Counted from the first letter of the stretch, positions 1 to 56,386 are shown. The stretch is 64,000 bases of DNA from Selaginella moellendorffii (GCF_000143415.4 NW_003314365.1:509181-573180), one strand, 5' to 3'. Numbers and translations are program-made. The notes: generated from the sequence alone by a model not told the origin.

Positions 1-1411
1 GTCAGGTCTCTCCATGGAGAGAATCCTGTTATGATAATATGCAGTCCTGCAACTTCTCTGCTCGATGTTGTGGTCGAGCCGCCTTCTAACCAACGTCTCT
101 CGTTCTTGAGTGCTACAAGAATTCTTCGACAAAGCCATTTTGATAGCAGTGCACTCGTCACACTTTGAAAAGCTGGAGTACTTTCCTATACTCACATCCC
201 TGAACCTGTTGCTCCACAATCTACTAAATCTAGATTGGCTCAGCTTCCTCTAGCCATTACTCTGGAGTTCCCGATTCACATCTTCCAATATGGCCCCCTT
301 GGTATACATGGAAGGGAGAACTCGTTGGGTGTCTCGTGTTCCATCTTCCAAGAGGCGGGTTTTATGTGGTTGCTGCTCGCTACATGTCTCGACAAACCTC
401 TTGAAGATTGCCTCTCCATATACAACATGACCCCTGGTTTTGTGCGTACCGTCGTTCCCATGGACTGCCTGTTGAACCCTTTGTTCCTCGAACTCAGTTT
501 TGATTCTGTAGAATGTGCTTCGAGGGACTCCATAAATGATTCTCCATGCCTTCATGCAGACCAAACCCCTCTGGAAGACCATGTCCCCCCACCTGATGTT
601 CTGAAGCATCAACAAATGACCGTAATGCCTCATACACAAAATTACGAGCTGCCTTCCAGGACAATGTCTTGTATCTTGCTCTCTCCTCTTCAATAGCATC
701 CCAATCAGCATGTTGACAGCACCTCCTCTTGCAACAAGCAACTGTCGAGACCATTCGGACCTCCATCGCCATTTTTTGCCTTTTCGGTTCCTTGCTCAGA
801 TCCCTTTGGCTGCGCTTTAGGAAGGTGTACTTTCTTTTCCCATGAAGAGATGTTCTGTCATCAGTTGTAGTGGTGTTTGATTGTGAATCCTTCACATTCT
901 CAAACACTAAATGCCTCAATTTCCACCGCACAATGCTTCCAATAGTCAGACTGTTTTCTTCTGTGTCAACAACCTCTAAAATTGCAACTCCAATATCATC
1001 CCAGCCCAATTCTTGATTAGCAACCGCATCTCTTGGATCGACAACTGTGGCTAAGCCCTCAGCTACCACCTCCCCCTCGGGGTTGTTTAGAAACACCTTT
1101 GCCTGAATCCATGTAGCACGGTTCTTAAGATCCACGGAGGGAACATGCGTCGCACTTGCGCTGTCCCCAACATCTGCTTTCTTCTGCAGATTTTTCAAGG
1201 CAACAACAACATTTACCCCGACGACCATCTCTCCTCGTTCAATAGCGACCACATTCCCATCGAAGACAGTCTCTACTGATACAGCAGCATTGCCTTCCCC
1301 AAGCCTTTGACAGTGTATAACAAAGTTCCGATCCATAGACACAAGGGTCCCTTTTGCAACTCTCTTCCCACCATTCAAAATGTAAACCTTTTCCCCAACC
1401 CTGAAGGCCAT
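1..1411 (-). pseudogene. Transposase-like gene, N-terminal part: two Tnp1/En-Spm-like domains, then a Cys/His-rich region resembling DUF7869-type transposon proteins; disrupted
   Basis: ATG at 1411 directly after a TTTCAG acceptor. Repeats VAKGTLVSMD..IH...LG...VSV and VAEGLATVVDP..V....LG...VAI...VRW. Then CCKRRC, a frameshift near 600 into VCMKAWRIIYGVPRSTFY, and an in-frame TAG at 250-252. The frame then stays open to base 1: FSRLWSNRFRDVSIGKYSSFSKCDEC...LDHNIEQRSCRTAYY. The catalytic region would lie left of the window. Confidence 0.65.
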
Positions 1412-1590
1412 TCTGAAAGTGCAGAAAAGAAGTTAAGACCATACAAAAAATGATTGGAGAATGGCCTAAATCATAACATACCAAATAGCATGAGGCCACA
1501 TGCCATTATTCAAACATGCTATTGACACCCACGTGAAATTTCGCATTCACAAAATTGGCATGAGCCCTCATGCCATTAGTGGTACCACTA

Positions 1591-1782
1591 ATGGCATGAG
1601 GCCTCACGCTATCTTTGGCCCCTGCTAGCCTGTTGCTATATTCCTTTTGCCTTGTTGCAACTGTATATATTTTTGTGTGCGTGACTAGTCACCCATACAA
1701 AAATATATACAGTTGCAGCAAGGCAAAAGGAATATGGCAATAGGCTAGTAGGGGCCAAAGATGGCATGAGGCCTCATGCCAT
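1591..1782. repeat. 192-bp near-perfect loopless inverted repeat (fold-back) bounded by two palindrome copies
   Basis: Centred on GTGACT|AGTCAC (1681-1692). The 96-bp arms differ at 8 positions by my count. A smaller palindrome centred on GGTACC (1581-1586) overlaps its left end. Confidence 0.95.
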
Positions 1783-1974
1783 CTTGATATACACACAGCT
1801 GCAGGCAAGTAAAAACATACATGACAATACGCTAGCCATGAAATTGCAAGGGCCCAAGATGGCATGTGGCCTCATGCCATTTCTAAATGTGGTCCTAAAC
1901 CATTCCATGGTGAACATACCAGGAAGCACAAGTGCCGAATATCAAGAGGAAGCGGTAGCCACACCAAAGACAGT

Positions 1975-2044
1975 GCCGCTCGCAACACCGCAACTACTCG
2001 TAGCGCCGCTCGCAACACTGCAACTGCTCGTAGCGCCGCTCGCA
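1975..2044. repeat. 30-bp CpG-rich tandem repeat (about 2.3 units) in the probable 5' UTR exon of the transposase-like gene
   Basis: GCCGCTCGCAACACYGCAACTRCTCGTAGC repeated. A minus-strand donor-like GTATGT lies near 1919. Confidence 0.75.
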
Positions 2045-2398
2045 CAAACTGCCACTCGCATAAACTGCCGCTTGCAATGGCGCTCGCAATGCCGCAACCG
2101 CTTGTAGACGCATAAACCACAGCTCACAACGCCGCTTACACAAGCAACGCTCACTGCGCTCAGCAGAACCAAGAACACGGCACACAAAAATGATAGACCT
2201 AGGAATGAGTTCGAGAATTCAAAAATAACACACGCTTGAACGTCACATCAAATCCTCTGACAAACCAGATCTTATGATTCCTCTGACAAATTTCAAACTG
2301 AGTAGCTTCTAGACTTTGCTGTCGGAGGTTGAACTTTGTCACATCATGTCCTTGCCTCGATCCAGCTGTGCCATGTCAGTGATTCGAACTTTGCCATG

Positions 2399-2416
2399 CC
2401 ATGTCAGCGATCCGCG
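2399..2416 (+). promoter_or_regulatory. Plant histone-promoter type-I-like element (hexamer + octamer)
   Basis: CCATGTCAGCGATCCGCG versus consensus CCACGTCANCGATCCGCG (one mismatch), in the divergent intergenic region. Confidence 0.4.
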
Positions 2417-2870
2417 CCAAGATTATTCGCCGTGTAAAGGAATAATTATGCTGTGTGTGTACGTCCATTTATGGCAATATAAGGCCACATGCCATTCAAA
2501 GAATAATGCTAGTCGAGCATCTTTTGGTGCATTTTTGGGTTCAAAATTGCATGAGCCCACACGCTATAAAGTTTACCTGTACCAAAAATAGATAAACATT
2601 TTTAAACTTACAAACACATGCCCTACTTACATTCCTTTGGTTGCTTAAAATTCAAAAATATTATAAACCTTTCTTTTTGCATTTTCAATGTTTTCAATTA
2701 TGGTTTTTGATTTTCGCAGGACCAGCCTAGTAATCTATTTGCATCCCGTCATGTTTATAGCTAGCTTTCGTTTGTCCCCTTCGCTAGCCTGAGATACCTC
2801 TGCTCGGCATCTGCCGCTTACAGCATTTGCCCAGAAAGGGCATCTTTCTTCACGCAGCATTTGCCACATG

Positions 2871-2902
2871 TTTAGGGTTAGGGTTTAGGGTTTAGGGTTT
2901 AG
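2871..2902 (+). repeat. Short interstitial plant telomeric repeat / telo-box cluster
   Basis: TTTAGGG TTAGGG TTTAGGG TTTAGGG TTTAG. Confidence 0.85.
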
Positions 2903-4137
2903 CAATTCAGTAGCTTGATAAACATGCAAATACAGAACTTGATGCAAAATCCTTTGATATGTCACAATGCCCCTAGGACCATAAACACATTTCAATAGAG
3001 AGGGTCCTTTCATTTCATAACTCCTTACGTAGATCTTGGTGAAACCAGAGTTAGTGAAGTTGGTTTCTTGTGATCCCGCATCTGATTGTGATGTCCCTTT
3101 GCAGTGTCGATGGAAAGGTCAATGCACACCAAACTATAGAATCTTGGAGCAAAATAACGGTCGGATCTATGGCAAATGCCCCTGAAACATTGTAAGGCTC
3201 GTGTGGTCTCATGTGGTGTCCGATCGAGATGCTTCTTTGCAGGGTCATCAAGAAGGACATTGTATACCATTCTATAAAATCTAGTTGCGATCTAACGGTT
3301 GGATCTCCAGAAAACTCAAAACAATCTCGCGCGTGTCAGAATATTCTAGGAATATACTCCTATGTGCTCCTGAAAATGGCATGCGGCCCCACACCATTCA
3401 AGAGATAACGCCAGATGACGCCGAGCATTTTTTGGTGCATTTTTTGGGATCAAAATTGCATGAGCCCACATGCTTGAACGTCATCCTCTGACAATTTATT
3501 TAGCTGAACATCTGGCATTTTTGGAAATACAAGATGCTTTGGAATATCCAATCATGCATGGTATAAATATAGCGAGGGTATTAAATGATATCCCAATCAT
3601 GATCTTTCTTTTGGATTTCGCGTGCATGCAGTCCGAGGAATGATGACGTTGCGGATTTCTTTTGGATTTCACGCATGCGCGCGCCGATCCAGAAATTAAT
3701 GGTGGCACCCAAGTCTGAGAAATGATGACGTGGCGGGATTACCAACCGTCGTGACATTTCGCGCGTGTGAGGTTAGGTTTTGCATTTTGCTTCGTACTCG
3801 CGCTCGCACACTCGCGCTCGCATCGCGCTCCCACTCGCGCTCCCACTTCTCTACAGGTTTCTCGTGTGCATCGGCATCCACTCGCGCTTGCATCACACTC
3901 GCGCTCGCATCGCACTCGTGTGCATCGGCGTCCACTTCAAGACACACCCAGTTTGTAACTTCGCCGCCAACTCCGCCGCCCACTCCGCCACCCACACGCA
4001 GCCCACTTGGCGTCCCGGGAGATTTCAGCGCCACTCTCCAACTGTAAGTGGCAGAGTAGCCTTGCTGCTACGATCCGCTGCACACACAGTGCACATTCGC
4101 CAGCGAGTCCGGTTGTCACGCCTCCATTCGGCTTCAA

Positions 4138-7100
4138 ATGGTAAGTCTTTTAGGCCAAGTAGAAAATGGCATGAGGCCACATGCCATTCAGTAGCAACAT
4201 TGGCATGCACCGATTGGGCTCTCGAGTGCAGTCCGGTTACAGATGGCGTGTAGCCTCACGCCATCTTAGGATGCAACCTCAAGACATCTGATGCAGTGGT
4301 GAATGGCGTGTGGCCTCACGTTATTTCCAGCTACTAGCTTTTCATCTATCAGCTCTAATTGTTGTGCATTTCTGAACAGGCGAGGAATTGCGTTCTTCTT
4401 CCAGCCACTGTCAATGTGGATGCAGAGAAGGGGGAGGAGCTCACCAGTTGGACTTTCGGGATGGAAGGCGAGGATCTGAGGCTGTACAACACAGATGGTG
4501 GGAGAAAAGAATGCATGGGGATCCTCATCCAAGTGACAGACACTCCATGCAGTTCCATGCAAGAATATGGACTGGCACTTGTGGTAGAGACAGCGTCTGC
4601 CTTCAAGATCCACCTTGCACATCCTAGCGGCTTCCCGGAGGGGGGTAGCAGCTATGAGGAATTCCTAGAGGGAGCTAGGGAGAGGTTGTCCAGGAGGCCC
4701 ACAATTTCAAAGACGCTGCGGGTCTATGAAGATCACATGGAATCCACGGACCTCACCTACGGCGATGTTCAAAAACTATATTCCAACATTGAGCCGTTGA
4801 GAGTGACTCCAGTTCGCGAAGCAAAGGGGAAGGGGGTCGATCTGGAAACTACCTCGAAGCAGAAAAGGGTGGTCAAGCTCAAGCCGATGTCCGACTCTCC
4901 TGCTCCAAAAAAGAAGCTACTCAGTGATGCCATTGCCTCGGGTTCGAACACTACACCCACCAAAAAGAAGAGCCGCAAAGAGCAGAAAGAGCAAGAAGAG
5001 GCAGCAAAAATCGTCGCAGATAATAGTACTTGTTACTATTCCAACAAAGTATATACAATCGACGTGAGCCGTATCGACATCCAAAGCAAATACAACCACA
5101 GGCTAGTATCTGATGAGTGGGTGGAGAAATTGAAGCAGAAGATGCTGGCAAGTCCAGTAACACCCGACATCGCAAACGTGATCCCCTACTACCAAAAAAT
5201 GAAGGGCGAGATGAGGTTTCCAGACTTGATCAATAGGAAGGTGTTGGACGATCAGAACATCCGGTTCTATGCCGTCTCCGGGCAGCATTCTAGCTTGGTG
5301 ATGCAAGAGATAGTTGTGGATATTATGGTGGGCGAGGAGGTGAAGAAAGTCTTCAAGACAAGAGTTGTCCGCCTGATAAAAGGCAACTCGCCCCTCCGAT
5401 CTATCATATACATCTCCCACGCGCAGAATGTCAAGCAAGAAACGTGCTACAAATCGGGTCTGCACGAGACATTGGCACGAACACGGAAGCTCTGGGTTCA
5501 ACTAAAGAAGCCACAAAAACCAGGACAAGGACGTGCACTAGCAACTAGCGCCTGGCAGGTAAGCCTCGTTGTATGTGGCATAGCATGTGGCCTCACGCCA
5601 TTTCCATTGCAGGAATTCTCGAGTCTTCTCTCGAAAACACTGGGGGTCAATGACACACTCAGCATCCATAACATTCTACTCGCGACAAAAGTTGTTTTTG
5701 ACAAATGGGTAGATGTGCTGAGGAGGTACCATGACGGGGAGTTGCCAAACTCAATGGGTGTGGAGGACGGCCGGAAGCCCAATGATTTGAAGCTCAACGC
5801 CTTGCGTTTCTCGCGGTCTCTAGACGACGACGACCTTCTGACAGTGGCTAATGCTCTTCTACGTGGTGAGGTTGTCTTCAACAAGACCAAAATGACTCCC
5901 GGCCATATTGTGACATACGAGGACTTGTGCACGACTCTGAGAGCTCGTGTGCTATTGAAGGATTGGATCTTCGAGCAAGTGGCCGTGGAGAGGGTGAGCA
6001 TCAACACCACGCAAGAGATGATGGAAGCGCTGGAGTTGTCAAATGAAGACATCGACGAGTACGTGAAGGGGGCCCCCAAGTTCATCGATCTGCTGCGGGA
6101 TGCCACGAAAAGTAAAGCTGAGAAGTTGGATCAATATCCAAATTTCATTAAGATTGATGTCGACCGCCGGCTTCAGAAACAGCTCGACCCCGCAGCAAAG
6201 GCCTATCGAGAACCTTACCGGGTATACTTGAATTCGGATGAGGATCAAAGGTGGAGGAGCATCGTTTCCCGCGGAGATGAGCAGGTCAAGAACATCTTTT
6301 GTGTGATGGACTTCACAAATGAGGAAATCACTCATGCAGACGAAGTCAGCTCCATCATTGACTTAATGGTGGGACTTGCGGAGGTGGAATCTTCAGTCCA
6401 CTATATGATCTACGACTCCGAATCCTATCACAAGTTCTGGAAGGCCTTGAACGAGGTGAAGGCTCGGTTGAAAGGCAAGGAGATGCGGGAGATCCATGGG
6501 ATAATGGCTAAGAAGAAGATACCGACGAATGTCTGCATCTTCACACTCGCCCTTGTTATTGGTCCTGCAGCAGAGTGGGACTGGAGTGACTTCCCAGCTT
6601 CGTTCGACAAGGCCAATCGAATTGATCTGAGGGAGGTCAATTTACCCGTGCCTGAGGAACTGAAGACGGCTATGGAGCTTTCGAATCCAAAGAAAGCTCC
6701 AGGTGCAGCATGGGAAATGCTCAGCTGGGTCTTCAACGCAATAACGGGTGGGTCACCTGCTTCCGACTCCAAGGGCAAATGCGTTGTCGAGTACAACTGC
6801 GGCGAACTATTCTTTCGAGCCGCACTACTCAAGGGTGTCCCGTGTGTTGCGGTGACAAACTCCATTGAAGAGGTGACTTCAATGGAGCATATAATTACAG
6901 TTGCCAAAGAAAAACAGTATCTTCTCTGCGAACCTGGTGAGTACGCACTTTAAGTTTAAATGTTATCTCACAAGCTCTGTATGCAGGAGCGTGGCCACCC
7001 CCAGATGCTGAAACGACGTTAACAGCTACTGTTGAAGATACCCATGTTGGGCCGAGCTCACAACCTGCACAAGGTAAGGTCACGTGTGGCCTCACGCCAT

Positions 7101-9754
7101 TTTGATTATAGATCGTTGTGAATATTCAGACACGAGGACTGAAAAGCGCACTGGTGGCGCATCGAAGAAGGACAAACAGAAAAGCAATAGGAAAAAAGGA
7201 GGTACAAATTATATTTGCAATGGCGTGTGGTCTCATGCCATTCCTTGCAGGAGAAACTTCTTCAAAGGCAAAACAGGCAAGCACCAGCCAAGCTCAAACT
7301 GACAGTGGTCATAAAAAGCGAAAGCACGTTGGACAGTCGTCGAGATCAGAGGCGTTTGATTCGAAAAGGAAGAAGGGCAACGAAAAGATGATAGGTAATG
7401 CCTCGCGGTTATGGCGTGTGTGCTCATGCCATTCATTGCAGATCAAGGGCTGAGTGAAAGAAGGCAGTCACCACCTCATGACTCAGATTCCTATGGCGGA
7501 CTCCCCTTCCCCAATCTCAATGGAGAGGTACAATGGATGAGGGAAGCTTTTCAAGGCAGGGCCACGTTTTTCTCATCTCGTCGTCTTCGAAGGGTGCAAG
7601 AACGTGCAGAAACCATGTTAAGACAGTCGGGTGAGGATACGGTCCTAGGTCACACACTAAAACAGGCTATGGATGTCTTGTATTTTGAGATGGAGACTCG
7701 GCCAGATGATTTTCCCAAGATGGTCCTGGAAGAACAAGCCATCCAGCCTGAGCAGCCTATGGAAGAAATGCAGGAGGGGGATGAGGAGCCAGAGAAAGAT
7801 AATGAGCAGGAAGAGCAGAAGGACGAAGAGGAGGACAAAGAAGAGGAGGACGAAGAAGAGGAGGACGAAGAGGACTTGGATGGTCCTCACAATGGTGACG
7901 ATCACAATAACGACGACGACAATGATGACGACGATGGCCAGCCTGAGGTGGCCAAAGAGCGGTGGAGGAAGGTCATACAAGACAAACCATCAGGTAAATA
8001 CATCCATTCCTAACCTCTTACCATTTCTAACATTGTCCATGTAGGTCGCAGAGCAAATGGTAAGTAGAGATTATTCAGTTGAATTTACAAACTCTAGCCT
8101 TTAGTGTCGAGGAAGGATAGTGCCAAGCAAGGGTCGAAACGTATGTCCAATCCTTCAGAATCAGCAGTGCGCCCAAGTGATATCGGTCCTAGTTCCTCAA
8201 TAGCAGTTGATGGTAAATACAGTATAGTCGATTCAATGTGCTAATGAGTTTGTTTTTAGTAGCACGGGAGGATACCATCTCAATCGAAGGGAGATATTTG
8301 GACATGCATATGGATCCGCCAGTGGACTCTACTTGCCTGCAAGAGTCATCAGAGCTGGTGGAGGCTACTATCCATATCAACGCCAAGCAAGCTGACCACG
8401 CTCCACTTGATGCTGCCCATACCACTGAGTCAATCTTGTCCACGTATCCAACTGACGGTGACCAGGCACCATTGGACCCACATGAGGCCGCCCCAGCCGC
8501 CGAGCCGGTCGTATCCTCATTTCCAACGGACTCAACGTGTGCCCAATCGTCTGACTACGCGCCGTTGGAACCTCCCTACACCGCCCCTGCTGCCTGTTCG
8601 GTCATGTCCACTTTGCCAACGGAGGCACCAGCTGAAATGGCGTGTGATCACACGCCATCGGAACCACCCCATGCCACTGTTGAGCCAGTTGTACCAGAGT
8701 CTACAGCTGAAATGGCATGTGCCCACACGCCATCGGATGCGATTGACCCCACATTGCAGAGGAGAGTATTTTCGCCCTTCACGTTTCCTTGACCAAAACC
8801 CTCTCAACGACCATCGGGAGCAACATTCGCTAATATTGTAGATGGTAAAATTGACTTGTACCATTTTTTATGCTGACGCATTTCATTTCAGAGTCACGGC
8901 GAACGTACTGTATCGTTTTTTATCTGAACGGTGTCCTTTTCTCCCATGAGCGTGGCTCGTCCTCGAATGTCATTGCACCCTCCAAAGCCTGCGGTCGCAA
9001 GTTGGTCAAAAGAGACAGATTCACATTAATCACATGGGAGAAACTGCGGGATCTAATAATGACCATGCGACACTTAAAACAGAGGGCCGGGTTCAATTTG
9101 CAATTGGGAGTTTGGACATCCATGATGCGCCACAATGCATTAACGTTGCTACAAATGATGCACGATCAGACGCGAGTAATATTACCATTTGACTTTCTCC
9201 TAATGCAGGAGGATTGCTTGACTATGGTCCATGTGAGGGGTAGCAAGCCCATCTTCGTCAAACCAGAGGCTGTAGTGATGAACCGGACTGCTAGCTCAAG
9301 TGAAATCCTCATCATCGATGACTCGCCGATTAAAACTACAGCGAACACGCACACATATGCAGTGCACCCCATCTCTTGCAGTATGGAAACTAGGGAGAAG
9401 AAACCGTATGTTCTGGGGGACCTTGCAAAACGGCTTGGAGCGATGGTGATAGAGAACCGGCCAGTCCAGGAGGTGGCTGCAGAAATCAACCAAATGGCAG
9501 ATGGAACGGTATATCAGAAGCCATTTGATCGGACAGACACCAGTCATCATTTATGGCATGTATATTGTCTAGCCAAGCACTATCCGCATCTCCATAATCT
9601 GCTCAACCGGATGGGTTCTTCGACCACTGAACATGAGCGTGGACGTATTAGAGAAGAGATGGCATTACTATTGGGTTTAAATCCTGATAGTGTGGAGAGT
9701 GATGAAATTCCAAGATTATTGTATAGGCGTTGGAGGCAAAAAATAACAGTCTGA
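4138..9754 (+). CDS. 11-exon cargo gene (about 1640 codons): ParB/Srx-like domain, degenerate beta-class N4/N6 DNA-methyltransferase-like fold, basic/acidic linker, C-terminal FCP1/NIF HAD-phosphatase-like domain; one in-frame TGA at 8790-8792
   Basis: Exons 4138-4140, 4380-5558, 5613-6936, 6987-7073, 7130-7201, 7251-7394, 7442-7993, 8045-8059, 8105-8212, 8260-8844, 8892-9754 join in frame through GT-AG introns and link six separate track ORFs. Motifs: YNHRLVSDEWVEKLKQKM...FYAVSGQHS (ParB-like); KCVVEYNCGELFFRAALLKGVPCVAV (MTase motif I-like); IVFYLNGVL, LGVWTSM, KPIFVK, ILIIDDSPIK (FCP1-like). Confidence 0.75.
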
Positions 9755-9901
9755 GATGGCATGTATTTATTTAAAAATGTAACTTATTATGGCATGGGGT
9801 TCCATGCCATTGTATTAATATTAAAAGACAATTCTTTGAGAGGATTTGCATTATACTAGAAGTGTTACAGCATGTTATTGGAAGTCTACGAAGTTGTTTT
9901 A

Positions 9902-10130: not shown

Positions 10131-10491
10131 AAAGGTTTGGAAACCTTATTTTACAAGTGGGATAATGACAATTCCCACTTTAACGAAATAGAGCTTAGAT
10201 GGAGTAGTGGAATCGAGATAGAGACAGTGTCTTTAACAGATTTAGTGAGAACTAAAAAAAGAAAAAGTGAGAACCACCACAAGTGGTCCAATTAGTCTTT
10301 AAGTTGGAGAGACTATCCTCCTTAGAGATGGGCAAGGCAAGGTGAGCCTTTGGTATCAAACCATTGACGAATATTGGCGAGGTGCCAAGAATGAAAAGAG
10401 TAATACAAGTTGGTGTTACTTTATAAAATAGTTTATCGTTCGATGAGGACATCGAACTTTGTCTATGGGTGGTGGAGTTGTGAGACACAAA
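10131..10491 (+). mobile_element. Fragment of long-LTR retrotransposon family A: 3' internal region, PPT and first 13 bp of LTR
   Basis: Homologous to the reverse complement of about 58970-59300. PPT GGGTGGTGGAGT is followed by TGTGAGACACAAA at 10479. Confidence 0.75.
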
Positions 10492-11700
10492 TGTAAGGAA
10501 CCAACTCCCTGAGGTGTCGTAGGCTAAAGGATCCCCGAAAGCATGACCGAAATGACAAAGAGTTCATCAGATGGGACTGAGTCTGAGATCGAGTCCAAGA
10601 CCGACTCTAAGATCGAGTTCGAGATGGAGTCCGGAGTCGAGTCCAAGGCTGACTTGGAGACCGAGTTCGAGACCGAGTCCGAAATCAAGTCCAAAGTCAA
10701 GTCCTAGATCGGGTCCGACATTGAGTCCGAAATCGAGTCCGAGACCAAATCCGAAGTCGGGTCTGAGATCGAATCCAAGATCGAGTTCGAGACTGAGTCC
10801 AAGTACTAATACAGGTCAAGGGGTGAAAGCCCAAAGTGTGCGCGTCTCCCAAAGGGGGGGGGGGGGGGGGGCTGCAGGGGGTTCCAAAAGTATAGTAGGG
10901 ATAGTGAGGTTCAGAAACCAGTCTTGAAGGAACTCTCCAGTGGTGCTTCCAAACTGACTTGAGGTTGAGACTGGGGCCGAGGCGTCTTGGGTGGGAGTGA
11001 GCATGGACTCGGGTGGTGCCGGAGGGGCCACCCACGGAAGTGCTCAAGAGCAGCTCCCACTTCCGAAGGGGAAACCGACTGCGGTGCTCTCGGCTCATGT
11101 GGAGTGGTGCCCCACTTGAGTACCTTGTGGCTCATTAGTCCTCGCCCTTCCTAGGGGCTTGGGCCTTCCCTTCAAGATGGAAGTGGGAGGGTAGAGGTAC
11201 CCATACCGGGCTGTTATGTCACGGTGTTTTGCCCTGGCGTCCCGAAGCAAGTATTGCACCCAAGACTTGGGATTTAGAGGGTCCCATGATCAAGTCTTGT
11301 GGTATCAAGGGATGTTAGGAACCTGGAGGCTTGGTGTGCTTGGCTGCTTATGCTTGTGGGGAGTGTAGCTGAACCTTAAGTCCAGTCTAACCCGGGGACA
11401 AGGATTGGGAAAGATTTGGGAATCTGTGGATGGATGGCTAATGCTCCGTTGCTCGTGTAATGAGTAGCTGAAACCAAGTAGGACCAAGTAGGAGCTGGTA
11501 CCATAGGCGGGGACCTTGGTGAGGGAACATAGCAAAAGCCAAAGTAGTGTGGGATGGATAGACGAGGTAAGTTGGCAAATTGGAAAGGAAAAATTTGTGG
11601 CTTACACCCAAATATCCCAAGACCCTTAACCAATTAAAAAAAAGGGTGCACTTTTGTTCATGGGACCTTTCCCTCTATATTTGAACCCCTATAGATCGTC
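10492..11700 (+). mobile_element. LTR family B copy nested in the family A LTR
   Basis: Starts TGTAAGGAAC, nearly identical to 63718 onward. Contains a GAGTCC/GAGACC hexamer array. PBS-like TGGTATCAAG near 11300. Right boundary approximate. Confidence 0.65.
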
Positions 11701-17015: not shown

Positions 17016-17089
17016 TTGAGCTGCTCTTGAGCACTTCCTTGGGTGGCCTCTCTAACACCACTAGAGTCCACGCTCCCTCCCACCAAAGG

Positions 17090-20000
17090 CCCCTAACCCC
17101 CAATCTCAACCTCAAGTTAATTTAAAAGCATCACTAGAGAACTCTTTCAAAATTGGTTCCTAGACCTCACTATCCCTACTATGCTTTCGAACCCAATCTC
17201 AAATCTTAGACTTGGTCTTAAACTCAGTCTCAAACTCAATCTCGAACTTAGCCTTAGACTCGGTCTCGAACTCGTCTCAAACTCCATCTTAGAGTCAATC
17301 TCGAACTTGTTCTAAGATTTGCCCTCATCTAATAAACTTTTTATCATTCCAATCATGGTTTCAGTGATCTTTTAGCCTACAACACCTTGGGGAGTTGGTT
17401 CTTTACAACTCCACCACCCATAGAAGTTTAATGCCTACATTGAACATTGCTTTTTAATTTTATGACTTTTTGACTATGTCTTTAAAGGCATCCCCCCATT
17501 TAGAGGTGTGACTAAGTCAACCTCCCCAACTAAGAGCCCATGACAATGGGATATAAATGTCCCTATACCCCTCACCTCACCACACCCTAGTATAGGGTTG
17601 GGACTTGAACCTAGGCTTGCTTTATTAAAGGGTTGGGAAAATTTCTATAGAATATATCTATGAATTTGACATCTTTGCAGGGAGTCAAGTGTACCTTCCT
17701 ATGGCTGGTCAACCTAGCTAACCCATGGTAATTAGCTTACCTTCGACTTAAGAATTCCTTCAAAACTGAACCTCACTATCCCTACTATACTTTTGGAACC
17801 CTCTACAGCCTTTACAGGTCTCAAATTCGATCTCAGACTCAGTCTCAAACTCGATCTCAGACTCAGTCTTGAACTTGGTCTTGGAGTCAATCTTGGACTC
17901 GGTCTCATCCGATGAACTCTTTATCATTCTGTCTTTACATCTACTTTAGTAACTTAACCACATGTTTGACTACTTGGAGGAGTCTCACTCATAGCCTCCA
18001 TAGGTCCTCATCTCAACTTCGGGTATTTCCTAGCTTCCAATTGTGTTCTCATAGCCACACTGACCTTGCACTTGGTTCAAGCTCTCCATATGTTCAATCC
18101 TACTTTAGGCACCTAAAGGTACCACCAATATACCAACCTCTTACACTAAGGCTATGATCGTTCTCATATCTCATTGGTAGTATAAGACCACCTATACTAG
18201 GGTCTTGTCTTTCCATGACTAGGCCATCCATCCATGAGTGGTCATCCCATGACCACACTTGAGCATCCATAAGATGTCTCAAGATACAAGGAATACCATT
18301 CCCTAATATGTGCTTTTTCATCCCTACCAAGTCTTTCTCCATCTATGGTAGTGCTCGTAAACACCACCATGGCCCAAAGGCCCATCCACTAAGTCCCACT
18401 AACCTTTTGGACTATGTAATGATAGCTTTGGTCACCAAGTAAGAGGACCACTCTTGCTTTCTATGGTCCATGACTTTAAGATGACATTTTAAAACACTGC
18501 AGCCTAATGTGAGCCTCATGGGTACTCCCCCACCTTACACCACTAGGGTGCCCCAGCCATGTGGCTAGAGTGATGTTCTGATAAGCCATGTATGGTATCC
18601 AAGTAGGTAGTGCCACCCACACTTGGATTAGGAGTATTGACGATTGAATCTCTTAGGGGAGTTAAAGCTAGCTCTTAAATATTTCACCAAGTTAACTCAC
18701 TTTTCCATTTGTGTTCACTCTAGCCTTAAACTCCTTGATGGTTATATCATCACCCACCACATGAGTGTAGTCTTAATTGGTCACACTAACCTTTCCTAGC
18801 TAAACTGGTTCCACTATAATCCTCACCCTATTATCCCATAAGGACTCACCAAACCCCTCAAGGTTTGGGAGGCAATTGCTTTGGGCTTTCACCCTTGTAC
18901 TTGGACTTGGACTCAGACTCGAACTCAAACCCAATCTCAGTCTCGCTCTTGATCTCCATCTTGGACTCCATCTCAGACTCCTTTTTGAACTCCATGTTAG
19001 ACTCTATCTGAGACTCCATTTCGAACTCCTTCTTAAACTCCATCTCGAACTCAGTCCCAACACTTTTATATGTCAATCCCTCTTATGTCCCTTTCTAAAG
19101 ACTCACTTATTGATTACTTCATACTAGTTCCTCGACCACTTCTTTGGGAGTTTCACTCCAGCTTTTGACTTTCTGAGTTAAAGTTTTTAGTCTAAACATG
19201 TTACGCTCGTTGGACTTTTGCTTTGGCCACTACCACGTGGCACTCTTTTGGCCCCAAATTGGACTTAGGGATTTGTGTCTTATACAAGTCCATGACTGGG
19301 TTTGAGACCAAGACAAAGACCAAGACTAAGACCGAATCTGAGTTTAAAGTTGAGATTGAGTTTGAGACTAGGTCTTATACTGGGATCAAAACCAAGACCA
19401 AGTCTAAGTCCAAGTCCAAGTCTGAGAGTGAAAGCCCAAAATTATTGTCTCTCTCCAGATGGACAAATAGGGTTTTTGATGAAGTTTTCAAGAGCTAGCT
19501 CTAACTCTTGTAGTCGATGCTCCTAATCCAAATATGGGTGGTATTACCTACTTAGATACCTTGTGTGGCTTATTGGAACCTCACTTTAGCCACATAGCTT
19601 GGCAGAAGGTTAGGGGAATACTCACAAGACTCATATTAGGCTGCAGTGTTTTAAAATATCATTCCAAAATCCTTGACTATAGGAAGGAAGAGGAGTTGCC
19701 CTCTTGCTTTATAACCAAGGGTATGGTTACATGGTGAGGATGTCTCAGAGGTTAGTGGAATTTAATGGATGGGCCTTTGAGCCTTGAACTAATGGCTGTA
19801 TTAGCAAGCACTGCCATGGATAGAGAAAGACTTTGTTTGAATCAAAGAAAGGATATTGGGGATGGTGTTCCTTATGCCATTAAGGATGCTAATGTGTGGT
19901 CATACAATGGAATCCTCCTTGAACTTGATCTCCAACTCTATCTTAAATTCCATCTTGGACTCTATCTTAGACTCCATCTTGAACTCGGTCTTAGACCCGA

Positions 20001-23158: not shown

Positions 23159-24902
23159 TACACTTGATATTCCTGAGACCGTCAATCAGATCACCATTGA
23201 AGATTTTCGTCCTTATGCGATGGAGATACTCCATCCTACTGCGTATTTGTCGTATGTAAACACGAAGCTCACTTTTGTCCAGTCCATTCTCAGCAGATAT
23301 CATATTCAGTGATAGATGGAACGCATGGAAGTTTTTTTTCCAAAGGGTGATGAACTAGACACGGAAAAGAAAGCGTGAAAGCAATATATATACCACAAAT
23401 CTCTCAAAACGGGAACTAAGGATATAGTCCTTCACCTGACAATCTCTCGGCTTAAATCTGAGTTTCGAAGGGAGGAACACAAGCAACAAGGCTTTATATG
23501 CCGACATAATCATATTCTCATCGTCGTGCTCTTTTTACAGTATCACCATCCTCCAGCTGGAAGAATTAAACTTATGAAAGAAAGAAAAGAAAACAGACCA
23601 AGTACCTTGATGATGGATTTTTTTTATCTCGTTGCTTTAAAGAGAGAGCACAATATTTTTAAAATGCCTCTTCCATTTCCCGAGTCTAGGTGGGATGACA
23701 AGTCCAAAACTGCAAGTTGAAATCTTTGGAACACGACAAGTTAACAAGTTCTGAAAGTTAAGAATGATGCTTGTCGTTCTCTACTACATCGACAAGCATT
23801 CCTCCAAGTACGGTGACAAGAAGATCCAACCTCATCCCTTTTTGTGACTCGCAAGGATAATTTGACTTCCTTTATCCACCGATGCCAGCTAGAACTTCAG
23901 GAGTTCTAGCAAAATGCCAGTTCTCCCATGCTCTGTCGCCCCCGATAGATGCAAGAAAGAAAAGAGAGTGAGTCAGCCGATGAAAGAGAAGGAGAGGTCA
24001 CAAGTAATCTCTTCTGTAGATGATAGAGTAGCTTCTTGAAGAGCGTGACTTTCGATCAAGGTCTGATATGGAGACTGGTGCGTCGATCCAGGTTCCAAGT
24101 GCCTTAAAAAGCATTCCAGTGACATGAAGAGGAAGGATGGGTGAGCTGGCAAGGAACCTGCCATGTACACCCTGGATTGGGAGAAATCCCATTGCTTCTG
24201 CTGCACCGCCACTGTGAAACAAAAAGAGGAGCACGGCAAAGAAGTCTCGGCCCAACAAGCAAGAGAGCAGCCTAGTAATCCCATCTCGATCCGTAAGCAC
24301 TCCTTGAGCTCCAGCAGCCGGAGCAATTGCTTGAGGCCAAGATGAAGGAGAGGTGGAAAGAATGCGTGGAATGCTTCATGCACACGTGGCTTACCCCATA
24401 TGTTACATACCTTTTGATCCCTGTAGCAATCAAAATGCGACTTTCATATGTTTATAAACATTGTAACTGTCGTCCTCGCTGAAGGCTCGTTCCCATTCAC
24501 TGCCTATTGATCCTTTCTCTTTTGTTGTCTCCTGATGCGCTCCATGTTTGAAATCTTCAATCTCTACATATCACAAGGAGCGCTGATGCACAAGAGCAGT
24601 ACCACATTAATATAAAGAGTACAACTTATAGCTACAATAAATTCTCATAAATACCAGCTAAAATTTACACATTACATTGGCTCATTCCACACTCTTTTTC
24701 TATTTCCTCACTCAATAACAAACTAAAAATAAACTCAACACTAACAAGGATGCAAGAAAAAAATGATGCATAAATGTTAAAAGATTTCTGAAAAAGGATA
24801 TCTTTTCTGATAAAAAAACAGTTGGTTTTCAACTGAACCCATGGACCAAATGAGAGAAAGTGGTTTTGCTCTAAACGTGACGTGGGTTTGGTCTCGCTGC
24901 AT

Positions 24903-26381
24903 ATGGATGACCAAGGGGAAGCGCAGAGGTCAGAAACGTTTCTGCGTTCAAATCTCGACAGCAGTTGTGCAACACCGAGGCATCAATGGAGGTCACCAGA
25001 CTGGAATCCTCTCAACAAACAGCCGCACACACCGTTCGCCTCACTTAATTCCCATTCTTTAACGACAAAAGACATCGCCGTTGACAGCAGCAATTCTACA
25101 GCTTCCTCATCCGATATTCTATGCCCTCCAATGGGATCCTTTGCCGTCAGTAATCTAGACGAAACACAAGGTCAGTCAATTGATCCGTGGAAGAAAAAGC
25201 TTCCAATGAAGCTTGATTTGGCAGCTCTCAGCAGAAAAGTAGATGATCATCTATCTGAGGACAAGATGCCTAACCCTGACATATCCGAATCCGACAATGA
25301 CCTCCACCTTCGGCGCCAAAAGATGGCTATGTGCGATCGCCAGTGTACACGAGTTATGGGCCATCTCTATTTTGGCAGCAAAAAAGTGGCGGAAAACTAT
25401 GCAATGCTAAGGCGTTTTCGAATCACACATATTCTCAATTGCGTTGGAATGGTTTGCCCCAGCTATTTTCCAAATGATTTCTCTTACAAGACACTCTGGC
25501 TTCAAGATTCACCTTCAGAAGATCTTATTTGCGTGCTCTATGACGTATTTGATTTTATTGAGGATGTCCGAGAGCAAGCAGGAGGCAGGGTCTTTGTACA
25601 CTGCTGCCAAGGGGTGTCCCGTTCGGCATCGTTAATAATTGCTTACGTTATGTGGCGAGAACGACGCAGCTTTGACCACGTATATGACGATGTCAAGCAG
25701 CGCCGAAGCGTGACATGCCCCAACATTGGTTTTGTCTTTCAGCTCACTCAGTGGCAGAAACGTGTGCTAGATGCCAATAGAGCAGCAGTCTCATGCAATA
25801 CGGTGGCTATAATGTACCGCATGACACCGCATTCGCATTTTTGCCCATTGCAGCTTGTTCCGAAAGCTGTGCACGGTCCGCCTACTTCGGATTTACTTGA
25901 CTCAAGAGGGGTGTTCGTTCTCCAGCTTCCCAACCGTCTTTATGTCTGGCGTGGCCGTGGCTCAGACAAAGCAATGGCAGCAGCTGCTGAACGTGCCGCA
26001 TTCCAGCTTGTGCGGTATGAGCATGCTCAAGGACCCATTGTGGTGGCTGTAGAAGGAAGGGAGCCACCATTCCTGCTCAATGCACTAAGACGTGAGCATT
26101 TACTGTCCGGTCCAGATATAAATTCCCAGGCCCAAAGGGGCGCATTTGCTGAACATATCAATTATGCGGGCAAGGCACCGTTTGGTCTAAAGCTAGTCCG
26201 TGCATATGATGCAGACTTTGAGCTGTATAGACAAGGGCTTGCAGCAAACGGTGGGGCCGTGTCTGTGGACTTTAATGCAGGATTGCAACCTCACCCCATT
26301 AGCAACTTTCCAGCGTCACCTCGAGTTGGAAGATGGAGGGTCATGCGCCCACAAATCAATCATATTGCAACAAGATGGTAG
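24903..26381 (+). CDS. MKP1: MKP1-like dual-specificity MAP kinase phosphatase with a gelsolin-like domain, single exon, 492 aa
   Basis: Catalytic VHCCQGVSRS, WLQDSPSED and CPNIGF, followed by YRMTPHS..PLQLVPK and LDSRGVFV...LYVWRG, typical of plant MKP1. First ATG at 24903. Confidence 0.88.
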   Translation: MDDQGEAQRSETFLRSNLDSSCATPRHQWRSPDWNPLNKQPHTPFASLNSHSLTTKDIAVDSSNSTASSSDILCPPMGSFAVSNLDETQGQSIDPWKKKLPMKLDLAALSRKVDDHLSEDKMPNPDISESDNDLHLRRQKMAMCDRQCTRVMGHLYFGSKKVAENYAMLRRFRITHILNCVGMVCPSYFPNDFSYKTLWLQDSPSEDLICVLYDVFDFIEDVREQAGGRVFVHCCQGVSRSASLIIAYVMWRERRSFDHVYDDVKQRRSVTCPNIGFVFQLTQWQKRVLDANRAAVSCNTVAIMYRMTPHSHFCPLQLVPKAVHGPPTSDLLDSRGVFVLQLPNRLYVWRGRGSDKAMAAAAERAAFQLVRYEHAQGPIVVAVEGREPPFLLNALRREHLLSGPDINSQAQRGAFAEHINYAGKAPFGLKLVRAYDADFELYRQGLAANGGAVSVDFNAGLQPHPISNFPASPRVGRWRVMRPQINHIATRW

Positions 26382-54778: not shown

Positions 54779-54789
54779 TTGTACATTGG

Positions 54790-55480
54790 TAACAATCCTC
54801 CCCCTCGTCAGGGAATGATCGTCCACGATCATACTTAGGCCACCATCCGGTCACCATGGTCCTTCTCTTAGGGTCTACCAAACCTTGGTTCTCCCTCTAA
54901 ATCCACCATGTTGAATATTCCTTCAGAATATTCCTGCCCCACTTGTTAGCCACGAGAATCGAACTAGGCTCCGATACCAATGTTAGGATCTTATCCCTTA
55001 CACCCTAAGCCAACTAGCTAAAGGGGTGATCACTTGATTGTAGGGCCCTTTCTTTATCCTATTATCCTGACCTGGTGCCTAACAATCCTCCCCCTTGTCA
55101 GGGAATGATCGTCCGCGATCATACTTAAGCCACCATCTGGTCACCAGGGTCCTTCTTTTAGGGTCTACCAAACCTTGGTTCTCCCTCTAGATCCACCATT
55201 ATTGAATATTCCTTCTGAATATTCCTGCCCCACTCGTTAGCCACGAGAATCGAACTAGGCTCCGATACCAATGTTAGGATCCTATCCCTTACACCCTAAG
55301 CCAACTGGCTAAAGGGGTGATCACTTGATTGTAGGGCCCTTTCTTTATCCTATTATCCTGACCTGGTGCCTAACAATCCTCCCCCTCGTCAGGGAATGAT
55401 CGTCCACGATCATACTTAGGCCACCATCCAGTCACCATGGTCCTTCTCTTAGGGTCTACCAAACCTTGGTTCTCCCTCTA
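54790..55480 (-). mobile_element. Tandem TRIM array: 104-bp LTRs at 54981-55084 and 55272-55375, about 186-bp internal segments, 291-bp period
   Basis: LTR TGTTAGG...CCTAACA. Minus-strand PBS TGGTATCGGAGC and PPT GGGGGAGGAT flank the internal segments. No coding capacity. Confidence 0.9.
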
Positions 55481-56366: not shown

Positions 56367-56386
56367 TTGAGATTGTTAACATTGTT

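What the first reader, a model, noticed from the sequence alone, without database searches (positions are those of the whole stretch)
4138..9754. Hidden 11-exon protein: ParB-like + pseudo-DNA-methyltransferase + pseudo-FCP1 phosphatase
Seen: six track ORFs splice into one frame of about 1640 codons. The ParB-like core is R.VS.EWVEKLKQKM...FYAVSGQHS. The region about 6280-6900 follows the order and spacing of beta-class N4C/N6A methyltransferases: IFCVMDFTN where DPPY/SPPY should be, IHGIMAKKK, NPKKAP..WEML, then GKCVVEYNCGELFFRAALLKGVPCVAV, which parallels GDxVLDPFxGSGTT..AA...GR..IG. The catalytic and SAM-binding motifs are degenerate. The last exon is FCP1-like with the nucleophile Asp of DLNG replaced (YLNG). 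Established: ParB fused to beta-class MTases occurs in phage and prokaryotic mobile systems, and bacterial-type amino-MTases have been co-opted by some eukaryotes. Inference: a prokaryote-derived module kept as a non-catalytic DNA/chromatin reader or decoy, with a possible phospho-peptide-binding tail.
Basis: partly seen in the sequence, partly recalled or inferred. Interest (0 to 1): 0.82.

Follow-up and report, generated by a model that had tools for sequence, protein, structure and literature searches.

The report
Transposon cargo gene: ParB, dead methylase, phosphatase
This is a decayed, silent copy of a large accessory gene carried by a multi-copy plant DNA transposon; it joins a bacterial-type ParB DNA-binding domain, a methyltransferase-derived domain that has lost its catalytic motifs, and an FCP1-like phosphatase tail, a variant of a transposon gene class so far noted only in algae.

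Summary
Eleven exons (4138-9754, + strand) join through ten canonical GT-AG introns into 1643 codons, broken by one TGA at 8790. Every quoted motif is present.

- **ParB/sulfiredoxin fold:** supported by three structure libraries and a weak profile match.
- **Beta-class amino-methyltransferase fold:** supported only by structure and language-model evidence. The top 7 of 48,161 PDB representatives are such enzymes (Z 7.4-8.1, low-confidence model). Sequence profiles are not significant. DPPY and FxGxG are absent across the family.
- **FCP1/NIF-like tail:** Pfam E=0.003 (below threshold) and giant-virus FCP1 homologues at 0.95 by features.

The interpretation needs correcting. This is not a host-retained reader. 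It is the cargo gene of a multi-copy transposon, and this scan noted the same element in many other windows of the genome. The window copy is decaying:
- Contigs from other runs carry CGA at 8790 and GAT (Asp) where the window has TAT (Tyr), so "YLNG" is specific to this copy.
- Differences are 26 non-synonymous to 10 synonymous.
- 25 of 27 A/T-versus-G/C differences sit in CG or CHG context.

RNA-seq shows no expression and no splice junctions, so the single-transcript model is unproven. ParB-methyltransferase transposon accessory genes are already described in algae. This is a new variant of a known kind.

The parts
4138..9754 (+). Predicted 11-exon accessory gene (1643 codons) with ten GT-AG introns: 4141-4379, 5559-5612, 6937-6986, 7074-7129, 7202-7250, 7395-7441, 7994-8044, 8060-8104, 8213-8259, 8845-8891.
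   Evidence: Splice model rebuilt. The frame is continuous apart from one TGA. No RNA junction support.
4971..5432 (+). ParB/sulfiredoxin-like N-domain (ORF aa 205-358), including RLVSDEWVEKLKQKM and FYAVSGQHS. The canonical GERRxR arginine motif is replaced by SGQHS.
   Evidence: AF2 block pLDDT 59-91 (mostly 75-91). Foldseek PDB top hits are Noc, ParB, KorB, PadC and sulfiredoxin. ESM-Atlas structure hits are mostly ParB_N families. hhalign to a phage ParB gives E=0.0034.
5613..6158 (+). Helical domain after the ParB-like domain (ORF aa 419-600), possibly the HTH/DNA-binding part. This is the best-conserved region across homologues.
   Evidence: pLDDT mostly 65-92. The ParB/Noc/KorB Foldseek alignments span 230-327 columns, longer than the roughly 150-residue N-domain. 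phmmer hits cover query residues 368-605.
6207..6935 (+). Beta-class amino-methyltransferase-like alpha/beta domain with degenerate motifs. VMDFTN stands where hhhDPPY is expected (6294-6320). VVEYNCGELFFRAALLKGVPCVAV stands where VLDPFxGSGTT..AA..GR..IG is expected (about 6774-6854).
   Evidence: VIA-align wide: ranks 1-7 of 48,161 chains are M.MboIIA, CcrM, M.RsrI, TTHA0409, EcoP15I Mod, M.BceJIV and M1.HpyAVI, Z 8.1-7.4. Most of the 100 nearest named Atlas clusters carry PF01555, score 0.80. Atlas structure best match TMq 0.51 is a phage PF01555 protein. hhalign is not significant. Model pLDDT is only 52.7.
7750..7940 (+). Acidic Asp/Glu-rich low-complexity linker in exon 7.
   Evidence: Translation; tandem repeats at 7810-7934.
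8790..8792 (+). In-frame TGA that breaks the reading frame in this copy. Contigs of two other runs read CGA (Arg).
   Evidence: One search gives the position (aa 1339). One search shows T>C at 8790 in X1 and X3.
8892..9754 (+). FCP1/SCP (NIF)-like HAD domain in the last exon. Motif I reads CIVFYLNGV in the window, and codon 8921-8923 TAT (Tyr) is GAT (Asp) in other copies. Motif II-like VWTS and motif IV-like IIDDSP are retained.
   Evidence: Pfam NIF E=0.003, 17.7 bits, below the 21.8 cut-off. Atlas features score 0.95 with 206 shared features to giant-virus FCP1-homology clusters. T>G at 8921.
1485..9810 (.). Sixteen copies of the element-specific 22-bp palindrome ATGGCRTG-N6-CAYGCCAT. They lie in the divergent intergenic region, in introns 1, 2, 4, 5 and 6, in exon 10 and just after the stop codon.
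   Evidence: Nine exact matches against 0 expected. Fifteen sites at up to 5 mismatches, plus 9789-9810. Half-sites run at 2.9-9 per kb here against 0.06 per kb in 10201-64000.
1..1411 (-). Start of a divergently oriented gene (ORFs 494-1411 and 250-741) that runs off the left edge of the window. It is a candidate transposase gene of the element.
   Evidence: ORFs. The only Pfam hint is a weak TNP1/EN/SPM hit, E=0.006. Its identity as a Sola-like transposase comes from unverified scan notes and was not testable here.

Best explanation
The region is one copy of the accessory (cargo) gene of a multi-copy DNA transposon in a streptophyte nuclear genome. The gene lies head-to-head with a second gene that runs off the window's left edge and is presumably the transposase. 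Both share an intergenic region studded with an element-specific 22-bp palindrome. The predicted 1643-residue protein has these parts in order: an N-terminal region, a ParB/sulfiredoxin-like domain, a helical domain, a domain derived from a beta-class N6A/N4C DNA methyltransferase that has lost the DPPY and FxGxG motifs, acidic and proline-rich linkers, and an FCP1/SCP-like HAD phosphatase domain. Intact copies keep the nucleophile Asp in that last domain (DLNG). Inferred, not shown: the ParB-plus-helical module recognises the element's own palindromes. The dead methyltransferase scaffold contributes DNA or SAM binding rather than methylation. The phosphatase-like tail acts on a phosphoprotein at the element, with the RNA polymerase II CTD the obvious candidate, to tune the element's transcription or resist silencing. 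The window copy itself is non-functional: it has a premature TGA, a Tyr at the nucleophile position, CG/CHG-type transition decay and no detectable transcription.
For: Gene model with ten GT-AG introns and a preserved frame. Homologues in Selaginella, Calypogeia, Riccia and environmental data. ParB fold: Foldseek PDB top hits Noc, ParB, KorB, PadC and Srx, probability about 1; ESM-Atlas ParB_N families; hhalign E=0.0034 to a phage ParB. Methyltransferase fold: VIA-align ranks 1-7 are all beta-class amino-methyltransferases; most of the nearest named Atlas clusters carry PF01555; the AFDB top cluster is a 'DNA methylase N-4/N-6 domain-containing protein' aligned over query residues 27-864, E 1.9e-13. 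FCP1-like tail: Pfam NIF E=0.003 and Atlas 0.95. Transposon and decay status: contigs from other runs differ by about 1-1.5% and carry CGA at 8790 and GAT at 8921; differences are 26 non-synonymous to 10 synonymous; 25 of 27 window-A/T versus other-G/C differences are in CG or CHG context. RNA depth over 4197-9900 is essentially zero (at most about 1x in two bins near 4200-4590 of one run) in two raw RNA-seq runs. The palindrome is confined to 1485-9810. Many other windows of the same genome carry the same element (unverified notes). Literature precedent: Ectocarpus Sola1-1 carries a ParB plus N4/N6 methyltransferase gene on the strand opposite the transposase (PMC12477816), and Bostrychia Plavaka PAG3 is a ParB fusion with adjacent inverted-repeat arrays (10.1101/2025.02.11.637652).
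Against: No transcript evidence exists for any junction. Contigs of a run guessed to be RNA (X1) are colinear with the genome across introns 1, 6 and 10, so they are unspliced or DNA. The methyltransferase call has no significant sequence support: Pfam finds nothing and hhalign gives E 0.11 and 0.35. It also rests on a model with pLDDT 52.7, and Z around 8 is the typical best score for such models (notes). Foldseek on the same model gave only generic alpha/beta hits. The transposase, terminal repeats and target-site duplication are not in the window, so the transposon class is not shown here. Copy number comes from contig depth and unverified notes. Binding of the palindromes and any phosphatase activity are pure inference.
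Confidence: 0.7

Rival explanations
1. Two or more separate genes. The 864-codon ORF (ParB plus methyltransferase-like) is a complete gene on its own, and the FCP1-like ORF (8870-9754, with its own ATG, 294 aa) is an independent gene, like the stand-alone 235-310-aa FCP1 homologues of giant viruses.
For: The ATG at 8870 opens a 294-aa ORF. The nearest Atlas clusters are stand-alone viral proteins of 235-310 aa. An 813-aa streptophyte cluster is the best feature match to the big ORF, score 0.97. No junction reads exist, and contigs in a possibly-RNA run are unspliced.
Against: All ORFs are linked by canonical GT-AG introns of uniform small size (45-56 nt), eight of them in phase 1, which restore one frame across 5.6 kb. 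In other copies the stop at 8790 is absent, so the upstream frame runs to the 8844 donor. A 1673-aa streptophyte cluster also matches at 0.94. The ATG at 8870 lies inside the predicted 47-nt intron.
Confidence: 0.15
2. A domesticated host gene: a prokaryote-derived module retained as a non-catalytic chromatin or DNA reader.
For: The catalytic motifs are degenerate across the whole family, which fits long-term non-enzymatic use. The Selaginella homologue sits among ordinary host genes.
Against: This copy has a premature stop, a neutral non-synonymous to synonymous ratio against its nearest copies, methylation-type decay and no expression. The element-specific palindrome array and the divergent second gene fit a transposon. 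The same element is noted in many other windows of the genome.
Confidence: 0.05
3. A fragment of an endogenised giant virus (Nucleocytoviricota) or another viral insertion, rather than a cut-and-paste transposon.
For: The FCP1-like tail is closest by features to giant-virus proteins. ParB-methyltransferase fusions are typical of phages and viruses. Giant-virus footprints are known in moss and Selaginella genomes (PMC4083422).
Against: The gene has ten spliceosomal-type introns. No other viral hallmark gene lies nearby; the other large ORFs tested in the window are host genes and a Ty3/gypsy element. Scanning IMG/VR with the tail found no relative.
Confidence: 0.07

Closest known systems
ParB-like + N4/N6 DNA methyltransferase accessory gene of the 21.5-kb Sola1-1_Ec32 transposon of Ectocarpus (PMC12477816); similar proteins are cited there for green and red algal transposons
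   Same: A large protein with an N-terminal ParB-like domain followed by a beta-class-type methyltransferase domain. It is encoded inside a large DNA transposon on the strand opposite a second gene. The proposed role is to bind and modify its own element.
   Different: Here the methyltransferase motifs (DPPY, FxGxG) are gone and Pfam no longer detects the domain. An FCP1/NIF-like HAD domain and long acidic and proline-rich linkers are appended, giving 1643 aa against 1104 aa. The host is a streptophyte. The transposase class is not verified in this window.
PAG3 of Plavaka transposons in the red alga Bostrychia moritziana (bioRxiv 10.1101/2025.02.11.637652)
   Same: A ParB-homologous N-terminal domain fused to an effector domain, with arrays of inverted repeats next to the gene. 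The same 'binds its own transposon' hypothesis is proposed there.
   Different: The effector there is a 2OG-dependent oxygenase. Here it is a degenerate methyltransferase plus a phosphatase-like domain. The palindromes here are dispersed, including inside tiny introns, rather than arranged in tandem arrays.
Phage and prophage ParB-N6_N4_Mtase fusions and ParB-terminase-locus methyltransferases (PMC4738411)
   Same: The same domain order, ParB_N then PF01555. These are the nearest named neighbours by language-model features, score 0.75-0.80.
   Different: Those are about 400-aa active enzymes with DPPY and FxGSG and no introns. Sequence similarity to them is not significant here.
FCP1/SCP-family CTD phosphatases (Pfam NIF, PF03031), especially the stand-alone FCP1-homology proteins of Nucleocytoviricota
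   Same: HAD-type core with motif II (T/S) and motif IV (DD) recognisable. Pfam NIF is the only hit, and Atlas scores 0.95.
   Different: Motif I is DLNG in the other copies and YLNG in this copy, instead of DxDx(T/V): the second (general acid/base) Asp is Asn. The domain is fused to a ParB/methyltransferase-like protein. The Pfam score is below the gathering threshold.

Membership tests
ParB/Srx superfamily (ParB_N, PF02195) | ParB/sulfiredoxin alpha/beta fold | tested here: met
   AF2 residues 205-358 have block pLDDT 59-91 (mostly 75-91). Foldseek PDB top 17 are Noc, ParB, KorB, PadC and Srx, probability 0.6-1.0 (at least 0.87 for 16 of them); Srx alignments have rmsd 3.7-4.3 over about 115 residues with TMt 0.46-0.56. 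ESM-Atlas rows 2-9 are mostly ParB_N families.
ParB/Srx superfamily (ParB_N, PF02195) | Significant sequence-profile match | tested here: inconclusive
   No Pfam hit and no PDB profile hit. hhalign of the family alignment against one phage ParB aligns the start of the domain at E=0.0034, 31% identity over 48 columns.
ParB/Srx superfamily (ParB_N, PF02195) | GERRxR arginine motif of CTP-binding ParB clamps | tested here: not met
   The family has (I/V)SGQHS, VDGQHT or SGAHS at the equivalent position, with no arginines. This resembles the GxH(R) of Srx and ParB-like nucleases rather than chromosomal ParB.
ParB/Srx superfamily (ParB_N, PF02195) | Cognate palindromic (parS-like) sites in cis | tested here: inconclusive
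   Sixteen element-specific 22-bp palindromes are present. Binding cannot be tested with these tools.
Beta-class N6A/N4C DNA methyltransferases (N6_N4_Mtase, PF01555) | Permuted Rossmann fold with the catalytic strand before the SAM-binding strand | tested here: inconclusive
   VIA-align ranks 1-7 and rank 23 are beta-class enzymes covering model residues 28-270, Z 8.1-6.6. Atlas structure best match TMq 0.51 is a PF01555 protein. Against this, model pLDDT is 52.7, Z around 8 is within the stated background, and Foldseek PDB gave nothing specific.
Beta-class N6A/N4C DNA methyltransferases (N6_N4_Mtase, PF01555) | Motif IV (D/S)PP(Y/F) | tested here: not met
   The window has VMDFTN. Homologues have VCDSAN, IADLRR, VLDATT and FADFAR. 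Only the Asp is invariant.
Beta-class N6A/N4C DNA methyltransferases (N6_N4_Mtase, PF01555) | Motif I FxGxG (SAM binding) | tested here: not met
   The window has EYNCGEL. Selaginella has EYGCGGQ and P0018 has DINTGGV, so the glycines are partly retained in relatives. The reference consensus is LDPFxGSGTT.
Beta-class N6A/N4C DNA methyltransferases (N6_N4_Mtase, PF01555) | Significant profile match to PF01555 | tested here: not met
   Pfam gives no hit even at E up to 10. hhalign against six Pfam-verified PF01555 proteins gives E=0.11 and 0.35, although the best local alignment is the predicted motif I pairing.
FCP1/SCP CTD-phosphatase-like HAD domain (NIF, PF03031) | Profile match | tested here: inconclusive
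   NIF is the only Pfam hit: E=0.003, 17.7 bits against a 21.8 cut-off, covering profile positions 53-126 of 160. Atlas features score 0.95 with 206 shared features, and 68 of 100 hits carry NIF. No PDB sequence hit.
FCP1/SCP CTD-phosphatase-like HAD domain (NIF, PF03031) | Motif I DxDx(T/V) with nucleophile Asp and Asp+2 | tested here: not met
   The window has YLNGV. Contigs of two other runs read G at 8921, giving DLNGV, so the nucleophile is present there but Asp+2 is Asn.
FCP1/SCP CTD-phosphatase-like HAD domain (NIF, PF03031) | HAD fold | not tested
ParB-fusion accessory genes of giant DNA transposons (Sola/Plavaka/EnSpm/Mutator) | Lies inside a multi-copy element, divergent from the transposase gene | tested here: inconclusive
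   A divergent gene starts at 1411 on the minus strand, but Pfam shows only a weak TNP1 hit. Near-identical sequence is assembled at high word depth in a 3-Mb low-input assembly. Other windows of the genome are reported to hold the same element (unverified).
ParB-fusion accessory genes of giant DNA transposons (Sola/Plavaka/EnSpm/Mutator) | Terminal inverted repeats and target-site duplication | not testable with these tools
   The left end of the element lies beyond position 1 of the window. The right end lies between about 9810 and 10200 and was not defined.

The most novel reading that the evidence does not exclude
A eukaryotic, transposon-borne analogue of ParB/parS. The ParB-like plus helical module of this protein binds the element's own 22-bp palindromes, which are spread through its promoter region, tiny introns and 3' end. 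It thereby brings a CTD-phosphatase-like domain (active or substrate-trapping) and a dead methyltransferase scaffold onto the element's chromatin. The effect would be to keep the transposon transcribed or to shield it from CG/CHG methylation-based silencing. The palindrome-centred 45-56-nt introns would have been created or shaped by the same binding-site motif.
Probability: 0.25. Interest if true: 0.75.

Novelty: new variant of a known kind. Interest (0 to 1): 0.5.

Why it matters
ParB-fusion accessory genes of giant DNA transposons have only been mentioned in passing, in brown, red and green algae, and none has been tested. This streptophyte version adds two features not found in the searched literature: a methyltransferase domain reduced to a scaffold, and a fused FCP1-like phosphatase domain. 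It also comes with an unusually clear set of candidate binding sites. If the self-recognition idea is right, it would show how a transposon manipulates its own chromatin or transcription. It would also give an experimentally tractable protein-site pair. For annotation, it shows that this locus is a decayed transposon copy and not a host chromatin gene.

Tried and rejected
- **Word-index protein searches:** three runs (whole ORF, family alignment, FCP1 tail) found nothing. Low-complexity words probably saturated the candidate lists.
- **Exhaustive phmmer:** gave only 14 weak hits, best 1e-10. Two of them (Zygosaccharomyces P0003, P0008) look like low-complexity artefacts by their Pfam patterns and were dropped.
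- **IMG/VR scans:** the family alignment was too divergent to use and the FCP1 tail gave no confirmed relative.
- **tblastn against homologue loci:** the window's pieces against the Riccia, Selaginella and Calypogeia loci found only the central conserved region. No FCP1-like part was seen there.
- **Profile search of PDB sequences:** the C-terminal and ParB alignments gave only artefacts, including a triplicated PCNA chain.
- **Foldseek on the low-confidence C-terminal model:** returned generic TIM-barrel and alpha/beta hits. Only the Foldseek-independent aligner picked out the methyltransferases.
- **hhalign against verified PF01555 proteins:** not significant in two runs.
- **Rfam:** nothing in the window.
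- **RNA-seq:** no coverage, so the junctions could not be tested.
- **Rejected readings:** chance ORFs are ruled out because homologues and confident folds exist. A catalytically active methyltransferase is ruled out because the motifs are absent family-wide. A 'pseudo-phosphatase' as a family trait is ruled out because Tyr is private to this copy.

Full report
**1. What is in the sequence**

Region 4138-9754 (+) holds one long ORF (4359-6953, 864 aa) followed by ORFs at 7118-7453, 7411-8013, 8238-8792 and 8870-9754.

I rebuilt the splice model from the DNA. Eleven exons give 4932 nt, that is 1643 codons plus the stop.
- All ten introns begin with GT and end with AG.
- Nine introns are only 45-56 nt long; the first is 239 nt.
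- Eight of the ten are in phase 1.
- Only one (5559-5612, 54 nt) is in frame and free of stops, which is why the 864-aa ORF reads through it.
- Those 18 residues fall in a disordered stretch of the model and are absent from the Selaginella homologue. Both facts fit an intron.

The frame is broken once, by TGA at 8790-8792 (aa 1339).

**2. Is it a real gene, and is it expressed?**

An exhaustive phmmer search of 1.84 billion representatives gave only 14 weak hits, best 1e-10. They include proteins from Selaginella moellendorffii, the liverworts Calypogeia fissa and Riccia sorocarpa, and unnamed assemblies. They align over query residues about 130-605, with the conserved motif (I/V)SGQHS, and more weakly over the C-terminal part. 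The ESM Atlas places the ORF next to two streptophyte clusters of 813 aa (0.97) and 1673 aa (0.94). The longer one matches the size of the spliced model.

Two raw RNA-seq runs of the same species (about 9 million reads each) give essentially no depth over 4197-9900 (at most about 1x in two bins near 4200-4590 of one run) and no junctions. Contigs of two older runs are colinear with the genome, introns included. One of those runs is only guessed to be RNA. The single-transcript model is therefore a prediction from sequence, neither supported nor refuted by transcripts.

**3. This copy is decaying; other copies are better preserved**

The contigs of runs X1 and X3 differ from the window by about 1-1.5%. 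I projected the 40 listed differences onto the gene model.
- At 8790 the contigs read C, giving CGA (Arg) instead of TGA.
- At 8921 they read G, giving GAT (Asp) instead of the window's TAT (Tyr). The motif elsewhere is therefore DLNG, not YLNG.
- 26 differences are non-synonymous, 10 synonymous and 4 intronic, which is about the neutral ratio.
- 27 differences are window-A/T against other-G/C transitions. Of these, 25 lie in CG or CHG context in the other sequence. This is the signature of deamination of methylated cytosines in plants.
- The only indels lie in introns or upstream of the gene.
- X3 is a 3-Mb assembly in which this sequence has word depth of about 100-190, as expected for a repeat.

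This scan's own notes list many other windows of the same genome with the same element. Those notes are unverified AI notes, used here only as a lead on copy number.

**4. Domains**

*(a) ParB/Srx-like domain.* The AF2 model of the 864-aa ORF is confident for residues 205-358 and 415-600.
- Foldseek against the PDB puts Noc, ParB, KorB, PadC and sulfiredoxin at the top, with probability about 1 and E of 2e-3 to 0.1.
- A shape search of the ESM Atlas returns mostly ParB_N families.
- hhalign of the family alignment against a phage ParB aligns the start of the domain at E=0.0034.
- Pfam itself does not detect ParB_N.
- The arginine-rich GERRxR motif of CTP-dependent ParB clamps is replaced by SGQHS.

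*(b) Methyltransferase-like domain.* Sequence methods fail.
- Pfam finds nothing, even at E up to 10.
- hhalign against six Pfam-verified PF01555 enzymes gives E=0.11 and 0.35.

Structure and language-model evidence agree with each other.
- The AFDB cluster hit of lowest E-value (1.9e-13, query 27-864) is a 1005-aa 'DNA methylase N-4/N-6 domain-containing protein'.
- For residues 600-864 alone, most of the nearest named Atlas clusters carry PF01555, score 0.80.
- A Foldseek-independent search of 48,161 PDB representatives ranks seven beta-class amino-methyltransferases first, with M.PvuII at rank 23. The seven are M.MboIIA, CcrM, M.RsrI, TTHA0409, EcoP15I Mod, M.BceJIV and M1.HpyAVI, at Z 8.1-7.4 over model residues 28-270.
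- The best Atlas shape match (TMq 0.51) is a phage PF01555 protein.

Caveats apply. The C-terminal model has pLDDT 52.7. Z of about 8 is the stated background for best hits. Foldseek on the same model was uninformative. I therefore treat the fold assignment as probable and membership as unproven.

The catalytic motifs are absent family-wide. Only the Asp of the strand-4 motif is invariant (VMDFTN, VCDSAN, IADLRR, VLDATT, FADFAR). The glycine-rich loop is partial (YNCGEL, YGCGGQ, INTGGV).

*(c) FCP1/NIF-like tail.*
- NIF is the only Pfam hit: E=0.003, 17.7 bits, below the 21.8-bit cut-off. It covers profile positions 53-126, which contain the motif II-like VWTS and motif IV-like IIDDSP.
- Atlas features give 0.95 with 206 shared features to giant-virus FCP1-homology clusters.

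**5. Context**

All 16 copies of the 22-bp palindrome ATGGCRTG-N6-CAYGCCAT lie between 1485 and 9810. They sit in the region between this gene and a divergent minus-strand gene that starts at 1411, in introns 1, 2, 4, 5 and 6, in exon 10, and after the stop codon. Half-sites are about 50-fold denser here than in the remaining 54 kb. The minus-strand gene leaves the window at position 1 and shows only a weak TNP1 Pfam hint.

The rest of the window holds ordinary nuclear content: a DSPc/gelsolin gene, a SHIPPO-repeat gene and a Ty3/gypsy element.

**6. Comparison with what is known**

The Ectocarpus transposon survey describes a 1104-aa protein with ParB-like and N4/N6 methyltransferase domains, encoded opposite the transposase in the 21.5-kb Sola1-1 element. 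[quoted passage not shown] The Bostrychia genome paper describes Plavaka PAG3, a ParB plus 2OG-oxygenase fusion, with adjacent inverted-repeat arrays and the same hypothesis (10.1101/2025.02.11.637652). Iyer et al. list ParB-HTH-fused Dam-type enzymes in chlorophytes and chytrids, and their phage ParB-terminase-locus relatives (PMC4738411). No held paper combines ParB, transposon, FCP1 and methyltransferase.

The kind is therefore known. The variant features are the streptophyte host, the degenerate methyltransferase, the fused FCP1-like domain, and palindromes inside tiny introns.

**7. Verdict**

The framing needs two corrections. The gene is transposon cargo, not a host-retained reader. The missing nucleophile and the stop codon are lesions of this decayed copy, not family traits.

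The mechanism remains inference: the ParB module binding the element's palindromes, and the phosphatase-like tail acting at the element. The most useful next data are a copy census with element ends and transposase, long-read cDNA, and a binding assay for the palindrome.

Noticed in passing
window 5559-5612, 7074-7129, 7202-7250, 7395-7441 (also 4141-4379): Five of the ten predicted introns contain the 22-bp palindrome. In the 47-54-nt introns 2, 5 and 6 it ends 9-11 nt before the 3' splice site, where the branch point and polypyrimidine tract would normally sit. Intron 4 has two in-frame acceptors (7111 and 7129). Introns of 45-56 nt seem very short for a land-plant-type genome.
   Followed up: partly
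window 1591-1782: A 192-bp near-perfect fold-back (91.7% self-complementary), bounded by two copies of the palindrome, lies in the divergent intergenic region (self-BLAST).
   Followed up: no
window 4041-4080: A 40-nt patch just upstream of the predicted start codon is covered at 24-38x by RNA-seq reads. All of those reads continue into unrelated sequence on both sides, and the same flank appears in DNA contigs. It is therefore a shared fragment of an abundant transcript encoded elsewhere, not expression of this locus.
   Followed up: no
window 2870-2902: An interstitial plant-type telomere-like repeat, (GTTTAGG) x 4.9, a permutation of TTTAGGG, lies inside the element's intergenic region.
   Followed up: no
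window 8629-8737: Two palindrome copies lie inside coding exon 10. They sit within a 75-nt direct repeat that encodes the repeated peptide AEMAC(D/A)HTPS in the proline-rich region.
   Followed up: no
L002:10001-11425 (Selaginella moellendorffii GL377575.1): The closest named homologue (451 aa; helical plus methyltransferase-like part with EYGCGGQ, no ParB part in the annotated model) sits among ordinary host genes (ArfGAP, VQ, SCAR). It has a near-identical second locus on another scaffold. This may be a domesticated derivative of the family.
   Followed up: partly
window 10202-10800, 17074-17928, 58968-59262, 63718-64000: Another dispersed repeat family with a 12/48-bp tandem array (GAGTCCGAGATC)n abuts the right side of the element and recurs three times in the window. 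It may mark the element's right boundary region.
   Followed up: no
window 24882-26381, 37487-38704, 50118-57049: Neighbouring content: a DSPc phosphatase plus gelsolin-repeat ORF, a SHIPPO (sperm-tail PG-rich) repeat ORF that suggests an organism with flagellate sperm, and a Ty3/gypsy LTR retrotransposon with zf-CCHC, protease, RT, RNase H and integrase domains.
   Followed up: partly
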